From the NCBI RefSeq assembly GCF_044704955.1, contig NC_091979.1, positions 316,572,001-316,636,000 on the forward strand: a DNA stretch of 64,000 bases, written 5' to 3'. The translations under genes and the position numbers were made by a program. Each line of letters begins with the position of its first letter. Within the stretch, counting starts at the first letter, position 1. Below, piece by piece: positions 1,741 through 58,800 of this stretch. A model generated the notes under the pieces. The model made no database searches. It had not been told where the DNA came from and saw nothing but the letters and a program-made list of their open reading frames with translations. This DNA comes from Pristiophorus japonicus (lineage: Eukaryota).

Positions 1741-2185
1741 AATGAGTATAGTTTCCCCAATGATTCATCTGGTTAAAGCAGTGAGTAGCTCAGCCATGTA
1801 AGCAGAAAGATCCCAGGATCCGATTCTGGATCCCTGCTGGATGCAAGTTCCCCAGTATCAGCGGCTTGAGCCTTTGATGCTCTTGTGCCTATTTTCAGGG
1901 AGGCTGCGAGCCTGGTTGGTGGGGAGGGGCAATGGGGATTGTGGTGTTAAGGTGCACCGTGACGGTATGGGACAGGCTCCATGGTCCAGCTGGTCTTTTC
2001 CTGTCTGTTGTTTTTGTTGTTTGTGTGGTTCAGCTTCTGGTTGTTATTTGAGCTGTCAGCTTTTTTAGCGCTGTTTAATAACTTTCCTGAGTTCCTCGGT
2101 TGGCCAGTGTGTAATCATTTCCCCATCACCATTCCTATCTGAATGTGTGACAAAACTAATAAATATTTAAACATATTTCTTACAG

Positions 2186-3614
2186 TGACACTGAAAGGGA
2201 CGCCCTGAAAGTGAAATTACTTCAGCTACAATGTCACTTCACGTGGAATCTGCAGATGGAAAATGTTGAGTGGGATGATTTGCAGGAACGACTAAACTAT
2301 ATAATAGAGTCTGATATTGTGAAATATCAAGCTATGACTTACAATCTACTTGCTTTTGTAAACTGTACGAGAGGCAACTGTGAGAAGTCGGTCAATAATT
2401 TATGGAAAGCTGAAGAAATTCTGAGGAAAAATCACAAATTTGAAATAGAAAAATGGAGCATCATCACCTATGGAAACTCTGCCTGGGTATATTATCATGT
2501 GGGAGAACTGGCAGAGGCCCAGTCCTACCTCGACGAGCTGGAGAGGATCTGTCAACAATTTACTGATGGCTCTCGGTATACAGCACTGATACCTGAAGTA
2601 TACGGGGAGAAGGGTTGGTCACTGTTGAAATGTGGCAGGAAATATTATGAAGAGGCAAATGAATGTATTGAGAAGGCTCTGGAGGGGGATCCTGATGACA
2701 TTGAATGGAACGCAGCTTATGCAACTGTTGTGTTTCGACTTAAAGAAACCTTTGAAGACCCACAGCGTCCTGAACACTGCAAGGTAGTGAAGCAGTTACG
2801 CCGCGCATTAGCACTGAACCCAAATGACTCGTTTGTCAAGATCATGTTGGCTCTGAGACTACAGGATTTCAATCAAATAGATGAATATTACAGATTACTT
2901 GAAGAAGTGCTGCTGGAGTCTCCTGATGATCCATATATAACTCAATATGCAGCCAAAGCTTTAAGAAAACAAGGATCTGTTGAATATTCCTTACAGCTAT
3001 TGAAAAAGGCACTGAAGGTTAAATCCTCTTCTGCACTTCTTCACCATGAGATCGGCTTATGTTACAAAGCTCAGCTGAAACCTCACCGGAAATACTTTGC
3101 TCGTGCAGACAGCAGAAAATTGATTGAACTTTGCAAGTACCATTTCCAAAAAGCGTATGAACAGAAACCCTCGCTTACTTTTGCAATACTTCATTTGGCG
3201 GAACTCCACGCAATATGTGGAGAATATTTCAAAGCCGATGATATCTACACCAACCTGCTTAGAAATAAAGATTACAGCCCTTTGAATAAACGATTAATAC
3301 ATTGGGACTATGGATTGTACCAGCTGTATAAGAAAGGATCCCAGCTGAATGCCATTCATCATTTCAAGGAATGCTTAAAACTCAAAGTTAAGACCAACAA
3401 GAATGAGGAATGCCGCGCAAAATTGAAACGTATTGCTGAAGATCGAATGAGTAAAGATTCAAGAGACAGTGTAGCTTTTGGTATATTGGGACTAATACAC
3501 CAGATTGATGGCAAGAAATCAGAAGCCATTGAATACTTTGAGAATGCCCTGGAGTGTGATCGTGACAATGAAGAATTTCAAAGTGCTCTATGTAAGCTGC
3601 GTCAGGTTACATAG
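2186..3614 (+). CDS. IFIT-family (interferon-induced protein with tetratricopeptide repeats, IFIT1/IFIT5-like) main coding exon 2; intact
   Basis: Motifs LQCHFTW, YGNxAWVYYH, EVYGEKGWSLLK, TPR helices and C-terminal AIEYFENALE. Splice acceptor tttcttacAG at 2184-2185 gives the typical IFIT phase-2 junction (ATGAG|T GAC ACT... = MSDTERDALKVKLLQLQCHFTW). The ORF-track GTG start is not the true start. Exon 1 was not found in the window. Confidence 0.93.
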
Positions 3615-40857: not shown

Positions 40858-41065
40858 CATAGAATTATAGAAATGACTACACAGGAGGAGACCATTCGGC
40901 CTCGGAGCTCGCACTCTCTTCTGTAATCCCATTCCCCCCAGATCTTATAACATTCTTCCTTTTCAAATATTTATCACGTTCCCTTTAGGTTTTAGAATCC
41001 TTGGTTTCTGTTCCATAGTTCCCCATTCGCCCACCACTGGAAATAATCTTTCACTATTTACCCAC
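40858..41065 (-). mobile_element. Old CR1-like 3' fragment
   Basis: CATAGAATTATAGAAAT tail and GGAGACCATTCGGCC 3' UTR motif. Confidence 0.5.
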
Positions 41066-41182: not shown

Positions 41183-41965
41183 CCCCATTCCCCAGTCTCC
41201 CTCTCCCCGAGCCCCCATTCCCCAGTCTCTCTCTCCCCGAGCCCCCATTCCCCAGTCTCTATCTCCCCGAGCCCCCATTCCCAAGTCTCCCAGTCCCCAA
41301 TCCCCCATTCCCCAGTCTCCCTCTCCCAGAGCCCCCATTCCCCAGTCTCCCTCTCTCCCCGAGCCCCCATTCCCCAGTCTCTCTCTCCACGAGGCCCCAT
41401 TCCCAAGTCTCCCTCTCCCCAAGCCCTCATTCCCCAGTCTCCCGCTCCCCGAGCCCCCATTCCCCAGTCTCTCTCTCCCCGAGGCCCCATTCCCAAGTCT
41501 CCCTCTCCCCAAGCCCTCATTCCCCAGTCTCTCTCTCCCCGAGCCCCCATTCCCAAGTCTCCCAGTCCCCAAGCCCCCATTCGCCAGTCTCCCGCTCCCT
41601 GAGCCCCCATTCCCCAGTCACCGTCTCCCTGAACCCCCATTCCCCAGTCTCCCTCTCCCCAAGCTCCCATTCCTCAGTCTCCCACTCTCCCCAAGCCCCC
41701 ATTCCCCAGTCTCCCTCGCCCGGAGCCCCCATTCCCAGTCTCCCTCTTCCCAAGCCCCCATTCCCCAGTCTCTCCCTCTCTCCCCGAGCCCCCATTCCCC
41801 AGTCTCCCTCTCCCCCACCCCCCATTCCCCAGTCTCCCTCTCCACGAGCCCCCATTCCCCAGTCTCCCTCTCCCTGAGCCCCCATTCCCCAGTCTCTCTC
41901 TCCCCAAGCCCCCATTCCCAGTCTCCCTCTCTCCCCCAGCCCCCATTCCCAGTCTCCCTCTCCTC
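41183..41965. repeat. 30-bp minisatellite (CCCCCATTCCCCAGTCTCCCTCTCCCCGAG)n, left array
   Basis: Visible approximately 30-bp period with indel variants. Confidence 0.95.
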
Positions 41966-41976
41966 CGGCCACCATA

Positions 41977-42037
41977 CATAGAATCATAGAATGGTTGCAG
42001 CACGGAAGACGACCATTTGGCCATCCAGCCCGTGCCG
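41977..42037 (-). mobile_element. About 60-bp CR1 extreme 3' end abutting the MHC class I 3' UTR
   Basis: The - strand reads GGCACGGGCTGGATGGCCAAATGGTCGTCTTCCGTGCTGCAACCATTCTATGATTCTATG: CR1 3' stem-loop region plus (ATTCTATG)2 tail. Confidence 0.7.
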
Positions 42038-42288
42038 AATTAGACATATCTCATTTACATTAAACACCAAAAGACCCAACTGGAGATTTCTATCCAATCA
42101 CCAAAAAGAAAATATCCCCAAACCCACTCAATGATAGATACGTTACCGATTACTATTAACACTGGCAGCAGCCAGTGACAATCAAACGAAATGAAGATGC
42201 AGAATCGTGGATTGCTTCTGAATGAACCCTCCTTGCGACACAGCAAGTCCAGATTCTAGTCCCAGTGAACTTCACTTCGGGACCAGCC

Positions 42289-43356
42289 TCAGGCTTGGGC
42301 TGGTGAGTTTGGGGATAATTCTCCTCGTTCAGCAGGGTTCGCTGGGCTGTAACCAGATGTCTCCTCTCCTCCTCTCCTCTTCCACACAACCGCACCGATC
42401 ACAAGAGCAATCAGGGCGACGGCAGCAATCACAATTCCAACAATCAAACCCCTATTTGTTCCCTCTGGCGATCCTGGAGTCACTCGGAACGTCCCGTCCC
42501 AGTCTCGGGTCTTCCCTCCTGCTTGGCCGCTCTGCTCATACTGACAGGAATAGGTGGCTCCATCCGCGGGCTCGATCTGAGCCCATGTCGTGAGCTGGTA
42601 GGTGCCATCGTGGTTGGGCAGGATGCCCGTGGATTCCGTGTCCCTGATTGGCTCGCCATTTCTCAGGAGGGTCACTTGGATTTCGCGAGGGTAAAAACCT
42701 GTGAGGAGACAGGAGAGTTGGGGGGCTTTAATATTCGACGCCTTGTCCACAGAAGGAAACACTTGAGGAGCAACAGCTCCCAGTTCTCTCTCTCCAGCCT
42801 TCAGGTATTTCTTCAGCCACTCGATGCACTCCTGCTCCAGGTAACTTTTGTCCTGCTGCATTTCGGCCCTGTCCTGGTCCCACTTGTTCTTGGTGATCTC
42901 TCCCCACGGTACCGGGGTGACCCACACCAGGCGATCCTTGTCGAAGCTGATCAGGTCCTTCCCGTCCCAGCCGTACTGCCAGAAGCCGCTGGTGGTGCCG
43001 CCATCCCGCAGCTCACAGCCGCACAACCTCTGCAGCGTGTGGATCCCGCCGGTCTGGTTGGTGCGGGTTAAGACGGTCTGAATGTTGCCTTTCATCACCT
43101 GCTCCTTGCCCCGCAGGATCTGTGTGTAGCGCTCCCAGTACTCGGCGCCCTCGCTCTCCCTGATCCACCGCTGCCGCGGGGTGTACTGGCGGCTCACACT
43201 GTCATAGTAAATAAACTGCTGGTCATCCACATAACCCACATCGGTGAACTCAGCAATGCCCGGGAGCGGAGTGATAGCCGTGTGCATGTACCGTAGGGAG
43301 TGAGAGCCTGCACACACCTCTCCACACAGAAGGGCCAGCACGGTCAGTCCAAACAT
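42289..43356 (-). CDS. Intronless MHC class I heavy chain, resembling the shark classical UAA lineage (355 aa)
   Basis: Signal peptide MFGLTVLALLCGEVCA; alpha1 GSHSLRY...EYWER...RTNQT (N86 glycan); alpha2 CGCEL...EITKNKWD...YLEQECIEWLKKY; alpha3 LSCLLTGFYP...PNHDGTYQ...YSC; TM GLIVGIVIAAVALIALVIGAVVW; tail with GYSPA. Single open frame across all normal exon junctions. Confidence 0.95.
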   Translation of the reverse strand: MFGLTVLALLCGEVCAGSHSLRYMHTAITPLPGIAEFTDVGYVDDQQFIYYDSVSRQYTPRQRWIRESEGAEYWERYTQILRGKEQVMKGNIQTVLTRTNQTGGIHTLQRLCGCELRDGGTTSGFWQYGWDGKDLISFDKDRLVWVTPVPWGEITKNKWDQDRAEMQQDKSYLEQECIEWLKKYLKAGERELGAVAPQVFPSVDKASNIKAPQLSCLLTGFYPREIQVTLLRNGEPIRDTESTGILPNHDGTYQLTTWAQIEPADGATYSCQYEQSGQAGGKTRDWDGTFRVTPGSPEGTNRGLIVGIVIAAVALIALVIGAVVWKRRGGEETSGYSPANPAERGELSPNSPAQA

Positions 43357-43452
43357 TGTTACTTCCCTCGACAGGCTGGAATGAGCGGTTTGCAGGCAAT
43401 CCTTTTCCGAGAGACCGTCCGTGAGCTGCGCCCAATTCAGACCGTGTGATTC

Positions 43453-44610
43453 CTGTGCCCTGTGCCGATACTGTGTCTCTGGGACTGTCTCTCTGTGCCC
43501 TGTGCTGATACTGTGTCTCTGGGACTGTCTCTCTGTGCCCAGTGCTGATACTGTGTCTCTGGGACTGTCTCTCTGTGCCCAGTGCTGATACTGTGTCTCT
43601 GGGACTGTCTCTCTGTGCCCAGTGCTGATACTGTGTCTCTGGGACTGTCTCTCTGTGCCCAGTGCTGATACTGTGTCCCTGGGACTGTCTCTCTGTGCCC
43701 TGTGCTGATACTGTGTCTCTGGGACTGTCTCTCTGTGCCCTGTGCTGATACTGTGTCCCTGGGACTGTCTCTCTGTGCCCAGTGCTGATACTGTGTCCCT
43801 GGGACTGTCTCTCTGTGCCCTGTGCTGATACTGTGTCTCTGGGACTGTCTCTCTGTGCCCTGTGCTGATACTGTGTCCCTGGGACTGTTTCTCTGTGCCC
43901 TGTGCCGATACTGTGTCTCTGGGACTGTCTCTCTGTGCCCAGTGCTGATACTGTGTCTCTGGGACTGTCTCTGTGCCCTGTGCTGATACTGTGTCTCTGG
44001 GACTGTCTCTGTGCCCTGTGCTGATACTGTGTCTCTGAGACTGTCTCTCGGTGCCCTGTGCTGATACTGTGTCTCTGGGACTGTCTCTCTGTGCCCAGTG
44101 CTGATACTGTGTCCCTGGGACTGTCTCTCTGTGCCCTGTGCTGATACTGTGTCTCTGGGACTGTCTCTGTGTGCCCTGTGCTGATACTGTGTCTCTGGGA
44201 CTGTCTCTCTGTGCCCTGTGCTGATACTGTGTCTCTGGGACTGTCTCTCTGTGCCCTGTGCTGATACTGTGTCTCTGGGACTGTCTCTCTGTGCCCTATG
44301 CTGATACTGTGTCTCCGGGACTGTCTTGGTGCCCTGTGCTGATACTGTGTCTCTGGGACTGTCTCTGTGCCCTGTGCTGATACTGTGTCTCTGGGACTGT
44401 CTCTCTGTGCCCTGTGCTGATACTGTGTCTCTGGGACTGTCTCGGTGCCCTGTGCTGATACTGTGTCTCTGGGACTGTCTCTGTGCCCTGTGCTGATACT
44501 GTGTCTCTGGGACTGTCTCTCTGTGCCCTGTGCTGATACTGTGTCTCTGGGACTGTCTCGGTGCCCTGTGCTGATACTGTGTCTCTGGGACTGTCTCTGT
44601 GCCCTGTGCT
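43453..44610. repeat. 40/38-bp minisatellite (TGTGCTGATACTGTGTCTCTGGGACTGTCTCTCTGTGCCC)n, about 29 units
   Basis: Visible period; lies between the MHC ATG and the X-Y module. Confidence 0.97.
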
Positions 44611-44796
44611 GTCTGTTCTTGCGCTTTGCCCAGTGCAGAGTGTTTTACACTCAGACTCCTCCGGTTCGATTGGTTCGAGGGTATATTTGTCTCCAATTAC
44701 AATAAAAACAGGCTGTGAGTCAATAGGCTCCGGGTAGAAAAGACACGGGGAGAGTTTGTGTTGGTGCCGAAATAAACTTTCCAAACATTGAACTAT

Positions 44797-44838
44797 CCAA
44801 TCAGACAAATACTGCGAGCTGCATCATCAGTTGCCGGG
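44797..44838 (-). promoter_or_regulatory. MHC enhanceosome X1-X2-Y module (RFX, CREB/ATF and NF-Y sites)
   Basis: The - strand reads CCCGGCAACTGATG ATGCAGCTCGCAGTATTTGT CTGATTGG: X1, overlapping X2-like TGATGCA, a 20-nt spacer and Y box CTGATTGG, oriented toward the class I ORF. Confidence 0.8.
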
Positions 44839-44956
44839 TAGGTTAAAGATAATCCCCGCCTCTCCCGGTCCCGAGTTCTCCCACCACCATCCAAACCCAA
44901 CTTCCCGACTCCCAACCCCCCGAAAGCTCTGCCCACCCCCGGCAGCTCGATCTCCT

Positions 44957-45115
44957 GAGGGGTTCAAGGGATCTGCTGCGAGGGGGCTGAAGGGATCTGC
45001 TGGGAGGGGGCTGAATGGATCTGTTCGGAGGGGGCTGAAGGGATCTGCTGGGAGGGGGCTGAAGGGATCGGCTGGGAGGGGGCTGAAGGGATCTGCTGGG
45101 AGGGGGCTGAAGGGA
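44957..45115. repeat. 24-bp tandem repeat (AGGGGGCTGAAGGGATCTGCTGGG)n, about 6-7 units
   Basis: Visible period; produces the GRGLKGSA pseudo-ORF. Confidence 0.9.
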
Positions 45116-45272
45116 GTTGCTGTGGTGTGTGAGAGAAGGCCAGGGCTGGAGAGGCCCAGTGACCTTGTCTGGAGCCCAGGGATCAGTCCAGCTCTTCCAG
45201 GCCCCCACAGAATAAATTACACTCAACCTGGCCTCTTCTACCTCCCGCCTGGCCTCACCATGATCCCCCCTG

Positions 45273-45818
45273 ACCCATTCCCCAGTCTCTCTCTCCCGAG
45301 CCCCCATTCCCCCTCTCCCCGAGCCCCCATTCCCCAGTCTCCATCTCCCCGAGGCCCCATTCCCCAGTCTTCCTCTCCCCGAGCCCCCATTCCCCAATCT
45401 CTTTCTCCCTGAGCCCCCATTCCCCAGTCTCCCTCTCCCCGAGCTCCCATTCCCCAGTCTCCCTCTCCCTGAGCCCCCATTCCCCAGTTTCCCTCTCCCC
45501 AAGCCTTCATTCCCCAGTCTCCCTCTCCCCGAGCCCCCATTCCCCAGTTTCCCTCTCCCCAAGCCCCCATTTCCCAGTCTCCCTCTCCCCGAGCCCCCAT
45601 TCCCCAGTCTCCCTCTCCCCGAGCTCCCATTCCCCAGTCTCCCTCTCCCCAAGCCTCCATTCCCCATTCTCACTCTCCCCAAGCCCCCATTCCCCAGTCT
45701 CCCTCTCCCCGAGCCCCCATTCCCCAGTCTCCCTCTCCCCGAGCCCCCATTCCCCAGTCTCCCTCTCCCCGAGCCCCCATTCCCCAGTCTCCCATTCCCC
45801 GAGCCCTCTTTCCCCAGT
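45273..45818. repeat. 30-bp minisatellite (CCCCCATTCCCCAGTCTCCCTCTCCCCGAG)n, right array; same unit and orientation as 41183-41965
   Basis: Visible period. Confidence 0.95.
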
Positions 45819-46180: not shown

Positions 46181-46464
46181 ATGATCATACTAATGGATGA
46201 TCGTGGATTTCTGCTGGCACTCATGAGCCAATTGTTCATTTGTTGTTGCCTCCAGGACCATTACGGGATTCCAATGGGTTTCCCCCGAACTGAGGGATGC
46301 CAGGCAGTGAGGCTGCAGGGAGGTGTTCCGGGCCCATGTGCACTGACCTGCTCATCTGTTCTGCTATTCTGACTTTACCAGCATTGCTATGTTGATTATA
46401 TATGAGCTAAAAATGTAAGTTAGATACACATAAGATGGGCTTTGATTATTTTGTTCTCTTACAG

Positions 46465-49400
46465 CAACACACTGAATGATTGCTTGAAAGCAAAACTTGG
46501 CCGCTTCAATGTCACTTCACGTGGGGCCCACAGAGAGACAGCATTGACTTGGACGACATGAAGTATAGATTACAAGATTTAATACAGGCTCGTGTGAAAT
46601 ATCAGGCCAGGTCTGACAACCACCTCGCATTTGTAAACTGTCAGCAAGGCAATTCAAAGGGGCAATTCAAAACTTAAAGGAAGCTGAAAAGATTCTGAGG
46701 GAGAACCATGAACATGAATTTGAAAGAAGAAGCATCATCACCTATGGAAACTATGCCTGGGTATATTATCACATGGGCCAACTGACAGAGGCCCAGTCCT
46801 ACCTCGACAAGCTGGAGATGATCTGTAAATAATTTACTGATGGCTCTCAGTATACAGCACTGATACCTGAAGTATACGGGGAGAAGGGTTGGTCACTGTT
46901 GAATTCTCCTTGTCAATACTATGAAGAGGCAAAGGAATGTTTTGAGAAGACTCTGGAGGAAGATCCTGATGACACTGAATGGAACGTTGGCTATGCGACT
47001 GTTTTGTTCCGTCTGGAAGGGTTTTCTGGTACCCCAGAGAGTGGTGACTGCAGCCAATCAGTGAAGCAGTTGTGACGTGTGCTGGAACTTGATCCAGATG
47101 ACTCTGTAGCCATGTTGGCTCTAAAACTACAAGAGTTCAATCAAAAGGTGGAAGAACACGAATTAGTTGAACAAGCATTGCAGAAGTCCCCTGATCTTCC
47201 ATATGTAACTCGTTATGCAGCAAAATTTTACAGAAGAGAAGGAGATGTGGAAAAAGCTGTGGAGCTGTTGAAGAAAGCATTAAAAATTACTCCAAACTCT
47301 ACCTTCATACACCACCAAATAGGTCAGTGTTGCAGAAAAAAAATATTTCAACTGATCAAATATCCAGGCAGCAAAGCCCCTCGCAATCCTGCTTTTCAAC
47401 AGAAAGCTGAGTTGATCAATCAATGCAAGTACTATTTTGAAAAGGCATTTGAGCAGAAGCCATCATTTATTTTTGCACAATTGCAAATCTACAACGCAGA
47501 AGGAGGCCATTTCGGCCCATCGTGTCCACACCGGCCGACAAAGAAACATACGGCCCTCAGTCAGCAGCCCTGAAAGTTACATATAAACGTATGAACAATG
47601 AACAATGGCAGAAAGGTAAAGAGCACCCAGCCCAACCAGTCTGCCCCACACAACTGCGACACCCCTTGCACCGAAACATTCTACACTCCTCCCCAACCGG
47701 AGCCATGTGATCTCCTGGGAAAGGCAAAAAACAGATAAAAACCCAGGTCAATTGGGGAAAAAATATCTCGGAACATTCCTCTCCAACCCATCCAGGTAAT
47801 CGAAACTCGTCCAGGAGATCACCCTGGATATATTCGATTTGCTGCAGTACTTACCATCATAGCTGTGCCTGCCAACAACAGGTTATCCAGTCTAATCCCA
47901 CTTACCAGCTTTAGGTCCATGTAACCCTGCAGATTATGGCACTTCAAGTGTCCATCCAAGCACCTTTTAAATGTGTTGAGGGTTTCTACATCCACCACCC
48001 TTCCAGGCCCTAAGTTCCAGACCCCCACAACCCTCTGCTTGAAAAAGCCACCCCTCAAATCCCCTCTGAACCTTCCACCAACCACCTTAAAACTATGCCC
48101 CCTCATAATTGAACCCACCACCAAGGGAAATAGGTCCTTGCTATCCACTATATCCAGACCCCTCAAAATTTTGGACACCTCAATGAGGTCTCCTCTCAAC
48201 ATCCTCTGTTCCAATGAGAACAAACACAGCCTATCCAATGATGTGGTATATTTGGACTTTCAGAAGGCTTTCGACAAGGTCCCACACAAGAGATTAATGT
48301 GCAAAGTTAAAGCACATGGGATTGGGGGTAGTGTGCTGACGTGGATTGAGAACTGGTTGTCAGACAGGAAGCAAAGAGTAGGAGTAAATGGGTACTTTTC
48401 AGAATGGCAGGCAGTGACTAGTGGGGTACCACAAGGTTCTGTGCTGGGGCCCCAGCTGTTTACATTGTACATTAATGATTTAGATGAGGGGATTAAATGT
48501 AGTATCTCCAAATTTGCGGATGACACTAAGTTGGGTGGCAGTGTGAGCTGCGAGGAGGATGCTATGAGGCTGCAGAGTGACTTGGATAGGTTAGGTGAGT
48601 GGGCAAATGAATGGCAGATGAAGTATAATGTGGATAAATGTGAGGTTATCCACTTTGGTGGTAAAAACAGAGAGACAGACTATTATCTGAATGGTGACAG
48701 ATTAGTAAAAGGGAAGGTGCAACGAGACCTGGGTGTCATGGTACATCAGTCATTGAAGGTTGGCATGCAGGTACAGCAGGCGGTTAAGAAAGCAAATGGC
48801 ATGTTGGCCTTCATAGCGAGGGGATTTGAGTACAGGGGCTGGGAGGTGTTGCTACAGTTGTACAGGGCCTTGGTGAGGCCACACCTGGAGTATTGTGTAC
48901 AGTTTTGGTCTCCTAACTTGAGGAAGGACATTCTTGCTATTGAGAGAGTGCAGCGAAGATTCACCAGACTGATTCCCGGGATGGTGGGACTGACCTATCA
49001 AGAAAGACTGGATCAACTGGGCTTGTATTCACTGGAGTTCAGAAGAATGAGAGGGGACCTCATAGAAACGTTTAAAATTCTGACGGGTTTAGACAGGTTA
49101 GATGCAGGAAGAATGTTCCCAATGTTGGGGAAGTCACAGTCTAAGGATAAGGGGTAAGCCATTTAGGACCGAGATGAGGAGAAACTTCTTCACCCAGAGA
49201 GTGGTGAACCTGTGGAATTCTCTACCACAGAAAGTAGTTGAGGCCAATTCACTAAATATATTCAAAAGGGAGTTAGATGAAGTCCTTACTACTCGGGGGA
49301 TCAAGGGGTATGGCGAGAAAGCAGGAAGGGGGTACTGAAGTTTCATGTTCAGCCATGAACTGATTGAATGATGGTGCAGGCGAGAAGGGCTGAATGGCCT

Positions 49401-55869: not shown

Positions 55870-58800
55870 ATTCATCACCAAATCACATCATGGTCTCTCG
55901 CCATACTCCTCTGACACCTCCTCCTTTGAACAGCTCATCTTGTTCCACATCTCTGTCATCTCATGTAATTCCTCATTCTCCATCGCCCAGCCAAATACCA
56001 AGTAATTTCCACTCAGATATCTTCACAACCTCTTCACCGACTGACTTCTCATCTTTGGTGATTTCAAGTACGTCCCAACTCAGCTTTCTCTCTCACCTCT
56101 GACTTCACTGCCCTCCTATCCTCCCTTAACCTCTCCCTCCATATAAACTCCACAACCCATATTCACGGCCACCCACTCGATCTTGCCAGCTCACTTGGCC
56201 CATTTTCCACCCTCCGTGAACTTGAATTCATCCAAAACTCTGCTGCCCGTACCCCAACTCACACCGTCCCGTTCACCCATCACCCCTTTGCTCACTGACA
56301 TACATTGGCTCCCAGTCTGGCAACGCCTCAATCTTTAAATTCTCATTTGGTGAGAAGGCAGATTGCAAAACAGTTTTGTTTAAGAGGTTAAGCTTCTAGT
56401 TTCACAATCAGGAAACAAATAATCTGGATAATAGAATAACATACACAGGAATTCAGTTGCCAGCTCTGTTCCCCTTTTGTAACTGACTTTGTGGTCCCGA
56501 TTTTAACTCCTCCCCACCGCCTGGCAAAAACCGACAGGCAGGCAGTTAAAATGGAGTGGGGTAATTGCTATGTAACCAGGCCGATGGAACTTGAGTTTCC
56601 CTGTGTCCATTCTCGTGAGCATTTTGTCTGCCTCTCCGGACCCGAGCCCATCACTTCTACTTGTGCTTTTCACTGACACTTTATTTTATTTCTCTTTACC
56701 CTTCATTGATCCCTCACTTCTGTCGACGTGTCTCCTATCATTTCTCCCCTCTCGGGTACTCGGCCCTCCCAATTCCCTACTCCAATCTGACAGCTCACCT
56801 CCACCTTCCTGCACTAATGCTGCCCTCACAGGTTTGACTGCATCTTAGATAAGCTTACAGCTGCCCCCTGTGCCTCGCTTGGCACTCTCCGGAGAGCCTA
56901 ACAAGACACTCAGCATTCTCTCCTTATGAGCAACAACTCAAACTGCCTCATCCTATTCTTCGCTGAGCTTACTACTCAGTGTGAGAGCTGGGCATTAACC
57001 TTTCCAATCTCCATCCCGTCCCACTCACCCCTCCCAAAGCTAACCCTGTGGATGATTGCTGCGACATCAGGGTCTTGACAGAAACCTGGCTGATGGTTGA
57101 AGGTGCCTTCCCCCAAGTGAATCTTTCCCACCAGGCTATACCTTTCACCACTGGCCTCACCCAAACGACCGCTGTGGCGGTGTGATATTTATCACCAAAT
57201 CACACCGAGGTAGTTCTCTGTACTTGTCTGGCATCTTCTCTCCCTTTGACCATCCCACTTTGTTCTACCTCTCTCAAATTTAAAATCCTCATTCTCTAAT
57301 GCCCAGCCAAATACAGAGCCAAATTTCTACCGAGATATCTTCACTGCTTTCCTCCCTTAGTCTCTGCACCAACTGACTTCTCATCTTCGGTGATTTCAAC
57401 CTCCATCTTAAATCAACATTCTCTCTCACCTCTGAGTTCATTACCCTCATATCCTCACTTAATCTTTCCCTTCATATAAACTCCCCTACCCATATTCATG
57501 GCCATCCCCTCGACCTTGCCTCCTCACTTGGCCTCGCTGTTCCCCCCGTGTCAATCACAGATAAGGCCATCTCTGATCACTTCCTAGTATTGCTCACAAC
57601 ACACATCCCCCTTTCCCCTCACAACTTCACTTCGTTCTGTGTCTGCCACTGTAAAAAAAACTCTCCCCAAGTCACTTAACACTGCACTTTCAAATTCTCA
57701 ACTGCCTCGCATTTGTCCCTCCATTGATCACAACATTTCTTCATTTACTGATCTGCTCAATCACTCCCTCACCTCCACCTCTGATGCTCTTGTCCCCATT
57801 TAAACCATTAATCTCTTTCACTCTGGTTCTTCTCCCTGGTACGGCCCTCATCACTGCTCCCTCAAGCCCAAGGGATGCAGACATGAATTTTTATGGTAAA
57901 CAAATGGTTTCGCTATTCATTGCCAGCTCTGACTGCAGCATATAAAGTATTATCGGGCCCTGCGCTCCTCTGCCAAAAATGCTCACCTTTCCACGATCTT
58001 TCTGGAAGGCATTGAAAGCCCCTGGCTTCTATTCTATTGACACACAGTCTTCCCAAATCCCTCTTCCTGCCTCTTCCACCCTCATCTCCAAAAACAAGTG
58101 TGAGGAGGTCATACATTTTTTGGTCACAAACATTGAGACCATCCGTTCAGCCGCATCACCTGCTTCCGTCTTTTCACCGAGCCCACCAGGTCAAACTTCA
58201 CCTATGGTTTCCCTCTGCTCTAGCCCTGAACTTGCATATTTCTCCATTTCTCCCCAATCTCACCTCATGCCCACTCCAAGCTCCCCTTGTCTATTCGACC
58301 CACCTCCTGCTCACTCGAACCCCATTGTTACCAAATTGATAACCGCCCAACTTCCCTTCCTGGCCCCCATAACAGCAGATATTGTTAAATCTCCTCAAGT
58401 ACTGTCCCCCAGCCCTTCACATCTGCTTTCATCATCCTTCTCCTCAAAAAAAATCATTCCTAACACCTCTGTCCCTGCAACCCACTGACCCATCTCCAAA
58501 ATCCTTTCCTCTCCAATGTCCTTGAATGTGCCATCGCCTCCCAAATCCATGCTGATCATTCCCGCAGATCCATGTTTGAAACCCTACAATCAGTTTTCCT
58601 CCAGTACTGATTCGAACCTTATCAAAGTCACAAATGACATCCTATGTGTCTGTGACTGTGTTAAACTAACCCTCTTCATTGTTCTCAACCTGTCTACAGC
58701 CTTTGACACGGTTGACCACAACATCACTTGCAACACCTCTCCTCCCTCCTCCAGCTGGGTGGATCTGCACTCTCCTGGTTCCATTCTTCTCTATCCAATC

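What the first reader, a model, noticed from the sequence alone, without database searches (positions are those of the whole stretch)
44797..44880. Well-preserved X1-X2-Y enhanceosome upstream of an intronless class I gene, a promoter a simple retrocopy should not have
Seen (- strand): CCCGGCAACTGATGATGCAGCTCGCAGTATTTGTCTGATTGG, preceded by GGGGATTATC (kappaB-like) and GGGACC (S-box-like, off-spacing). It aligns without gaps to the HLA-DRA X-Y region as I recall it (CCTAGCAACAGATG-20 nt-CTGATTGG). Known: this geometry recruits RFX/CREB/NF-Y and NLRC5 or CIITA. Inference: introns were lost in place by cDNA recombination, or an upstream-initiated transcript carried the promoter along, or the copy captured another MHC-pathway promoter; each would make expression plausible.
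Basis: partly seen in the sequence, partly recalled or inferred. Interest (0 to 1): 0.8.

Follow-up and report, generated by a model that had tools for sequence, protein, structure and literature searches.

The report
Doubled MHC promoter inside shark retrogene
An intron-free MHC class I gene copy in the Japanese sawshark brought its own MHC-type promoter along when it was pasted into a new place, and that promoter holds two copies of the X-Y control module, so the copy could be switched on like a normal antigen-presenting gene; this has not been shown.

Summary
The motif is real and not chance. The reported string lies on the minus strand at 44797-44838. Its X box (GCAACTGATGATGC) is identical over 14 bases to the mouse H2-Eb X box, and its X-to-Y length equals that of mouse H2-K.

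It has an AP-1/CRE-like X2 (TGACTCA) and is the best match in the window to the H2-K X-Y segment. A degenerate ISRE plus GCACC precede it; CCAAT and TGTAAAA follow.

The 1.4 kb gap to the start codon is a 40-bp x 29 minisatellite in an ATG-free leader.

The unit 41971-45273 (upstream DNA, both modules, leader, ORF, 3' UTR) is one clean insertion into a 30-bp minisatellite and ends in two CR1 terminal octamers. The promoter therefore came in with the copy, most likely through an RNA started upstream of it, a known but rare route.

Canonical ISRE, kappaB and CRE sites are absent, S-X spacing differs from mouse, and one probable RNA contig covers the modules. Function is untested.

Earlier scan notes report sister copies and a 104-bp doubled SXY promoter elsewhere in this genome.

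The parts
44867..44872 (-). S-like box of module 1 (GGGACC), 34 nt (start to start) upstream of CCGG of X1
   Evidence: The same hexamer occurs in the H2-Eb S region printed in PMC4374748, but the S-X distance here is 11 nt longer.
44848..44857 (-). GGGGATTATC, a weak kappaB half-site-like string between the S-like box and X1
   Evidence: It fails GGGRNWYYCC. I do not count it as a functional element.
44797..44841 (-). Module 1: CTACCC-GGCAAC (X1, perfect RGYAAC half-site), TGATGCA (X2 position), CTGATTGG (Y)
   Evidence: The X box is 14/14 identical to mouse H2-Eb, and this tile gives the top local score in the window for H2-Eb (35 against a next best of 28 outside the promoter).
44769..44779 (-). 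Degenerate ISRE-like AAGTTTATTTC directly before the S-like box of module 2
   Evidence: One search aligns AGTTT-ATTTCGGCACC with the H2-K ISRE plus the start of S. One spacer base is missing, and it does not meet the ISRE patterns I scanned.
44763..44768 (-). S-like box of module 2 (GGCACC), exactly 104 nt from that of module 1
   Evidence: GCACC follows the ISRE in H2-K. The distance to CCGG is 34 nt here and 28 nt in H2-K.
44693..44737 (-). Module 2 (promoter-proximal): CTACCC-GGAGCC (X1), TGACTCA (X2, AP-1/CRE-like), TAATTGG (Y)
   Evidence: It is the best ungapped match of the H2-K X-to-Y segment in the whole window (27/41). One of 200 shuffles reached that score.
44643..44673 (-). Core promoter candidates: CCAAT (44673-44669) and TGTAAAA (44649-44643). 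I predict a start site near 44615-44625.
   Evidence: The start site is inferred from geometry only.
43453..44611 (-). 40-bp x 29 minisatellite inside the presumed 5' leader
   Evidence: There is no ATG from 44787 to 43357. 70-nt pieces of the repeat occur in the contigs of both runs.
43357..43452 (-). Unique part of the 5' leader next to the start codon
   Evidence: An exact 192-nt contig spans 43235-43426 with no joint. The RefSeq-derived protein of a sister copy (P0001) reads 25 codons into this leader.
42289..43356 (-). Intronless MHC class I ORF, 355 aa
   Evidence: Pfam MHC_I 3.5e-52 and C1-set 1.1e-14. It is 99% identical to a Pristiophorus japonicus class I protein.
41971..42288 (-). 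3' UTR ending in ATTCTATGATTCTATG (41992-41977), the CR1-type terminal octamer twice
   Evidence: the only such site in the window. The octamer is defined in PMC2612034.
44901..45273 (-). 5' part of the insert upstream of the modules, with a 24-bp x 7 repeat (44959-45122)
   Evidence: No contig lies at 44974-45300.
45274..45818 (.). 30-bp minisatellite flanking the insert on its 5' side; it ends at unit phase 28
41183..41970 (.). The same 30-bp minisatellite on the 3' side; it resumes at unit phase 29

Best explanation
The motif is the distal half of a doubled MHC class I-type promoter that travelled inside a retrocopy.

Shown:
- Two co-oriented modules lie exactly 104 bp apart. Each has an S-like box, X1, X2 and Y.
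- The proximal module is preceded by a degenerate ISRE and followed by CCAAT and a TATA-like TGTAAAA.
- A leader with no ATG follows. It has been inflated by a 40-bp minisatellite and runs to the start codon of an intact, intron-free class I ORF.
- All of this is one 3303-bp insert in a 30-bp minisatellite, with continuous repeat phase across it and a CR1 octamer tail at its 3' end.

Inferred:
- A spliced class I transcript that began upstream of the normal promoter was copied by CR1 reverse transcriptase and inserted next to an IFIT gene, so the downstream promoter came along.
- Segmental duplication then made the sister copies.
- The inherited promoter, mainly the proximal module, still binds RFX, a bZIP factor and NF-Y, and can recruit the shark NLRC5 or CIITA orthologue. 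It would then start transcription near 44620.
For: - Motif identity and spacing against mouse H2-Eb and H2-K.
- The RGYAAC-to-ATTGG pattern is unique in the window.
- The 104-bp register holds for all four boxes.
- Order of elements: ISRE-like/GCACC prefix, then CCAAT and TGTAAAA.
- No ATG over 1431 nt before the class I start codon, while all five upstream ATGs lie at or above 44788.
- The insert is cleanly bounded: repeat phase 28 on one side, 29 on the other.
- The 3' end is (ATTCTATG)2, the only such site in the window.
- Contigs of probable RNA runs match the CDS, 3' UTR and leader exactly and hold minisatellite units. No joints were seen.
- Whale shark has CIITA and NLRC5 orthologues (PMC8455134).
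- Promoter inheritance through an upstream-initiated parental transcript is documented for about 3% of expressed mammalian retrocopies (PMC4772013).
- CpG observed/expected is 0.73 in the promoter and 0.96 in the leader, against 0.44 for the window. This is weak support.
- Lead only: scan notes s1-879240 and s1-879071 report a doubled SXY with the same 104-bp period at a class I gene start on another piece.
Against: - There is no consensus ISRE, kappaB or CRE.
- X1 of the proximal module is a poor RFX half-site (GGAGCC).
- S-X spacing is 6 nt (versus H2-K) or 11 nt (versus H2-Eb) longer than in mouse, and in mouse spacing and the S box decide NLRC5 recruitment (PMC4374748).
- A 269-nt contig (44652-44919, 3 mismatches, depth about a quarter of the CDS contigs) covers both modules. 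If it is sense RNA, some transcripts start upstream of them.
- The kind of the runs is not on record, and contigs show no strand and no ends.
- Gapped similarity to H2-K is not significant on its own: a TE-like site at 57053-57106 scores higher.
- In salmon cells the enhanceosome seemed dispensable for IFN-gamma induction (PMC7573153).
- I did not align the parent promoter.
Confidence: 0.6

Rival explanations
1. The promoter came along but is now a fossil. The modules are no longer used, and the RNA seen comes from a start upstream of them (about 44920-45120), from read-through, or from the neighbouring IFIT transcription unit.
For: - A contig covers 44652-44919, including both modules, at about a quarter of the CDS contig depth.
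- Canonical ISRE, kappaB and CRE are absent, and S-X spacing is off.
- The exactly matching CDS contigs have a depth of only 35-50, while related class I sequence in the same runs reaches tens of thousands.
Against: - A transcript starting above the modules would carry four or five upstream ATGs with short ORFs, whereas the 1431 nt below 44788 have none.
- The copies are young (99% identical proteins), so the motifs have had little time to decay.
- Contigs cannot show strand or ends.
Confidence: 0.22
2. DNA-level duplication of an intron-containing class I gene with its promoter, followed by loss of all introns in place through recombination with a cDNA.
For: It would explain promoter plus intronless CDS without needing an unusual transcript.
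Against: - The unit is a 3.3-kb insert with exact phase continuity of the host minisatellite across it, and a CR1 octamer tail exactly at its 3' boundary. That is the signature of one target-primed reverse transcription event.
- It lies in an IFIT cluster, not next to other MHC genes.
Confidence: 0.08
3. The upstream segment was captured from another SXY-bearing gene (class II, B2M, TAP) or from one of the solitary SXY modules reported elsewhere in this genome, for example by template switching.
For: - Module 1 has a class II-type X box (14/14 with H2-Eb) and a GGGACC S-like box.
- Scan note s1-879241 reports exon-less SXY modules among transposons. I did not check this.
Against: - The proximal module, its ISRE-like/GCACC prefix and its X-Y length follow H2-K.
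- The two modules are copies of each other in one register.
- The segment is continuous with the class I leader.
Confidence: 0.07
4. Chance resemblance in repeat-rich DNA.
For: Gapped alignment scores of this size do occur by chance in the window.
Against: - A 14-mer identical to a mouse X box, an 8-mer Y box at the right distance, a second module in the same register, and the position upstream of a class I ORF.
Confidence: 0.03

Closest known systems
Mouse H2-K (class I) ISRE-S-X-Y promoter, the NLRC5-type module of Ludigs et al. 2015 (PMC4374748)
   Same: - The order is the same: ISRE-like, GCACC, X1 (CCGG...), X2 (TGAC.C), Y (ATTGG).
- The CCGG-to-ATTGG length is identical (41 nt).
- Module 2 matches 27/41 without gaps.
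- CCAAT and a weak TATA lie downstream.
   Different: - The ISRE lacks one spacer base.
- S-to-X is 6 nt longer.
- The module is doubled.
- There is no enhancer A.
- Occupancy by NLRC5 or RFX is unknown.
Mouse H2-Eb (class II) S-X-Y module, the CIITA type
   Same: Module 1 shares the X box GCAACTGATGATGC (14/14), the Y box CTGATTGG and a GGGACC S-like box.
   Different: - X-Y is 1 nt longer and S-X is 11 nt longer.
- The module sits upstream of a class I gene, not a class II gene.
Retrocopies that inherit a parental promoter through an upstream-initiated parental transcript (Carelli et al. 2016, PMC4772013)
   Same: An intronless copy whose upstream sequence belongs to the inserted unit and looks like the parent family's promoter.
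   Different: - It was made by CR1 (octamer tail, no poly(A), no target-site duplication seen) rather than L1.
- The parent is an MHC class I gene.
- The leader carries a 1.16-kb minisatellite.
- I did not check the parental sequence.
Doubled SXY promoter of a sawshark class I gene start on another piece of this genome (scan notes s1-879240 and s1-879071; I did not see the sequence)
   Same: Two tandem modules with the same 104-bp period.
   Different: That promoter is said to have an ISRE and H2-K-like spacing. Here the ISRE is degenerate, and the S-like box I could identify is 6 nt further out.

Membership tests
MHC SXY regulatory module | X1 box with an RFX-type half-site (RGYAAC) | tested here: met
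   Module 1 has GGCAAC, a perfect match. Module 2 has GGAGCC (3/6), close to the weak site of H2-K, GGACAC (4/6).
MHC SXY regulatory module | X2 box (CRE/TRE-like) abutting X1 | tested here: inconclusive
   Module 2 has TGACTCA, a consensus AP-1 site, at the X2 position. Module 1 has TGATGCA, which is not a CRE but equals the H2-Eb sequence at that place.
MHC SXY regulatory module | Y box (inverted CCAAT, ATTGG) on the same strand | tested here: met
   CTGATTGG at 44804-44797 and TAATTGG at 44699-44693.
MHC SXY regulatory module | Constrained X-Y spacing (20-22 bp in NLRC5 targets) | tested here: met
   CCGG-to-ATTGG is 41 nt in both modules, as in H2-K. PMC4374748 gives the constraint.
MHC SXY regulatory module | S box at about 16 bp from X; it decides NLRC5 versus CIITA | tested here: inconclusive
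   GGGACC and GGCACC lie in the same register in both modules, but 6 nt (versus H2-K) or 11 nt (versus H2-Eb) further from X. The published S logo is a figure and could not be read.
MHC SXY regulatory module | Position just upstream of the transcription start | tested here: inconclusive
   The geometry fits a start near 44620 (CCAAT, TGTAAAA). One unstranded contig covers the modules, and no 5' ends are available.
MHC SXY regulatory module | Bound by RFX5/RFXAP/RFXANK, CREB/ATF and NF-Y, and dependent on NLRC5 or CIITA | not testable with these tools
   Only the existence of CIITA and NLRC5 orthologues in a shark is documented (PMC8455134).
Classical class I promoter (enhancer A + ISRE + SXY) | Consensus ISRE and kappaB sites upstream of S | tested here: not met
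   No match to the ISRE or kappaB patterns in 44600-45310. There is only a one-base-short ISRE-like string and a kappaB half-site.
Retrocopy with inherited parental promoter | Coding region without introns | tested here: met
   A single 355-aa ORF covers the leader peptide, alpha1-3, the transmembrane segment and the tail.
Retrocopy with inherited parental promoter | Retroelement-type 3' end and discrete insertion borders that enclose the promoter | tested here: met
   (ATTCTATG)2 at 41992-41977. The host 30-bp repeat goes from phase 28 to phase 29 across 45273-41971.
Retrocopy with inherited parental promoter | Upstream sequence homologous to the parent gene's promoter | not tested
There is only motif-level likeness to mouse and an unchecked scan note.
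Retrocopy with inherited parental promoter | Retrocopy transcripts start inside the inherited sequence | tested here: inconclusive
   Contigs show the leader and minisatellite in probable RNA, but neither 5' ends nor strand.

The most novel reading that the evidence does not exclude
The two modules are functionally different. The distal one would be a class II/CIITA-type module (H2-Eb-identical X box, GGGACC S box) and the proximal one a class I/NLRC5-type module. A shark class I retrogene family in an interferon-induced IFIT cluster would then be under dual CIITA and NLRC5 control. The tandem would preserve something close to the ancestral, not yet class-specialised SXY switch.
Probability: 0.1. 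Interest if true: 0.75.

Novelty: new member of a known kind. Interest (0 to 1): 0.5.

Why it matters
Retrocopies usually arrive without a promoter, and most die for that reason. This one arrived with an MHC-type promoter, which would explain how an intron-free class I family could stay intact and multiply outside the MHC, among interferon-induced IFIT genes.

It also gives a compact natural construct for testing whether the SXY/NLRC5 logic known from mammals already operates in cartilaginous fish: two modules, a core promoter and a leader in about 300 bp before the minisatellite. Little promoter work exists for these fish. My searches found no paper on shark class I promoters or on intronless shark class I genes.

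Tried and rejected
- The search of earlier findings by sequence gave nothing.
- Gapped local alignment to mouse H2-K is not significant alone. A TE-like site at 57053-57106 scored 40 against 31 for the promoter and has no Y box. I rely on the structured motif and spacing counts instead.
- Ungapped comparison of module 1 with H2-Eb fails (23/40) because of a 1-nt spacing difference.
- Scans for consensus ISRE, kappaB, CRE, GAS and Sp1 sites in 44600-45310 found nothing.
- blastn of the promoter, leader, 3' UTR and 5' part of the insert against the rest of the window gave only self hits.
- The old HLA-DRA papers are held as abstract and references only, so the recalled HLA-DRA string was not checked.
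- Read laying gave contigs only: no strand, no ends, no joints.
- The mouse reference sequences were entered only as the primers printed in PMC4374748. The scripts overlapped them.

Full report
**Where we are.** The window comes from the Japanese sawshark. The 355-aa ORF at 42289-43356 (minus strand) is 99% identical to a Pristiophorus japonicus class I protein and 72-73% identical to sawshark and spiny dogfish class I proteins. It has Pfam MHC_I and C1-set domains and no introns. An intact IFIT gene lies at 2183-3614 (E 2.5e-99 to IFIT5 structures). A broken IFIT copy starts at 46464.

**The observation.** The reported 42-nt string is on the minus strand at 44797-44838. It occurs once in the window and never in shuffles. 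I took reference sequences from a paper rather than from memory: the mouse H2-K and H2-Eb SXY reporter primers printed in PMC4374748.
- The X box GCAACTGATGATGC is identical to H2-Eb at 14 of 14 bases. It is followed by the same Y box, CTGATTGG, one base further away than in H2-Eb.
- The CCGG-to-ATTGG length is 41 nt, exactly as in H2-K.
- An RGYAAC half-site followed by ATTGG at this distance occurs nowhere else on either strand.

This is not chance. GGGGATTATC fails the kappaB consensus, and there is no consensus ISRE, CRE or GAS in 44600-45310.

A self-comparison of the promoter shows one clear peak at an offset of 104 bp, with 35% identity against about 24% at other offsets. At that offset every box recurs:

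| Box | Module 1 starts at | Module 2 starts at |
|---|---|---|
| S-like: GGGACC / GGCACC | 44872 | 44768 |
| CTACCCGG | 44841 | 44737 |
| X2 position: TGATGCA / TGACTCA | 44826 | 44722 |
| ATTGG | 44801 | 44697 |

- Module 2 (44737-44693) has a consensus AP-1/CRE-like X2.
- It is the best ungapped match to the H2-K X-to-Y segment in the whole window: 27/41, reached by 1 of 200 shuffles.
- It is preceded by AGTTTATTTCGGCACC, which aligns with the H2-K ISRE plus the first bases of its S region. One spacer base is missing, so it is not a consensus ISRE.
- CCAAT (44673-44669) and TGTAAAA (44649-44643) lie downstream.

The order is therefore ISRE-like, S-like, X1, X2, Y, CCAAT, TATA-like. That is the layout of a mammalian class I promoter, with an extra, more class II-like module in front.

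One caution: gapped alignment scores of this size are not significant by themselves. A TE-like site at 57053-57106 scores higher against H2-K and has no Y box.

**Spacing.** X-Y spacing equals that of H2-K. The S-like boxes lie 34 nt before CCGG in both modules, against 28 nt in H2-K and 23 nt in H2-Eb. In mouse, spacing and the S box decide NLRC5 recruitment (PMC4374748). So either the shark S element is something I could not recognise, or the geometry differs. I leave the S box as inconclusive.

**Why the module is 1.4 kb from the start codon.** Between TGTAAAA and the ORF lie about 30 unique bases, a 40-bp x 29 minisatellite (43453-44611) and 96 unique bases.
- On the minus strand there is no ATG from 44787 down to the class I start codon, a stretch of 1431 nt. 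All five upstream ATGs of the insert lie at or above 44788.
- Counting one repeat unit only once leaves about 310 unique bases, where roughly five ATGs would be expected by chance (my estimate).
- The leader is thus compatible with scanning from a start just downstream of the TATA-like box.

**How the promoter got there.** The same 30-bp minisatellite flanks the gene on both sides.
- Phase tracking shows that the upstream array ends at unit position 28 (45274) and the downstream array resumes at position 29 (41970). So 41971-45273 is a clean 3303-bp insertion, with no duplication or loss of target.
- Its 3' end is ATTCTATGATTCTATG, the only such site in the window. This is the terminal octamer of CR1 elements (PMC2612034).
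- The insert contains 370 bp upstream of the modules, both modules, the leader, the ORF and the 3' UTR.

The simplest reading is one CR1-mediated retroposition of a spliced class I transcript that had started upstream of the normal promoter. This route is documented for about 3% of expressed mammalian retrocopies (PMC4772013). 'Introns lost in place' does not fit an ectopic insert with a retroelement tail. 'Captured from another gene' is disfavoured by the class I-like order of the proximal module and by the continuity with the leader.

**RNA.** Two runs hold parts of the stretch. Their kind is not on record. They have short contigs and depths of tens of thousands over class I coding parts only, so I take them to be RNA-seq.
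- Exact contigs cover 41980-43117 and 43235-43426.
- 70-nt pieces of the minisatellite are present in both runs.
- No joints were reported.
- These points fit an unspliced leader that includes the minisatellite.
- A 269-nt contig with three mismatches, so from a sister copy or allele, covers 44652-44919 including both modules, at about a quarter of the CDS contig depth. Nothing lies at 44974-45300.
- If that contig is sense RNA, some transcripts start upstream of the modules. That would weaken the claim that the modules act as a classical upstream enhancer, but it would show just the kind of transcript needed as the retroposition template.
- Contigs give no strand and no ends, so this stays open.

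**Context and limits.**
- A shark has CIITA and NLRC5 orthologues (PMC8455134).
- In salmon cells the enhanceosome seemed dispensable for IFN-gamma induction (PMC7573153), so mammalian logic cannot be assumed.
- CpG observed/expected is higher in the promoter (0.73) and leader (0.96) than in the window (0.44). This is weak support.
- Earlier scan notes say that sister copies exist over about 2.5 Mb and were 'pasted, promoter included'. They also say that a class I gene start on another piece has two SXY modules 104 bp apart. The equal period is a striking lead, but I did not see that sequence.

**Verdict.** The feature is real and correctly recognised as an MHC-type X-Y module. It is half of a doubled class I-type promoter carried inside a CR1-made retrocopy. 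The mechanism of arrival is a known, rare kind. Activity of the promoter is plausible but unproven.

Noticed in passing
window 57053-57106 (-): This is the best gapped match in the window to the mouse H2-K S-X segment (score 40), in TE-like DNA. It has no ATTGG at X-Y distance. I take it as chance, though solitary SXY-like modules are reported elsewhere in this genome.
   Followed up: partly
window 43453-44611 (-): The 40-bp x 29 minisatellite has no ATG and no stop codon in any frame on the gene's strand, which gives a spurious 419-aa 'ORF' at 43437-44696. Units alternate between 38 and 40 bp towards the promoter end.
   Followed up: partly
window 2183-3614 (+) and 46464-47573 (+): Two IFIT second exons, each after a tcttacag-type acceptor. 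The first is intact (467-aa ORF, E 2.5e-99 to IFIT5). The second is broken by stops. The class I insert lies 1.2 kb upstream of the broken one, on the opposite strand, possibly inside its first intron.
   Followed up: partly
window 41003-41014 (-): The only near-ISRE in the neighbourhood (GGAACAGAAACC, which reads GGTTTCTGTTCC on the plus strand) lies just before the left 30-bp array. It could be the ISRE of the broken IFIT gene's promoter.
   Followed up: no
window 44959-45122 (-): A 24-bp x 7 tandem repeat (CTCCCAGCAGATCCCTTCAGCCCC on the gene's strand) lies inside the insert, upstream of the modules. Origin unknown.
   Followed up: no
window 43405-43415 (-), compared with protein P0001: A sister copy's annotated protein starts 25 codons upstream in the leader (MLLTDGL...). 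This copy reads gcg cag there instead of an ATG, so the copies differ in having an in-frame upstream start.
   Followed up: partly
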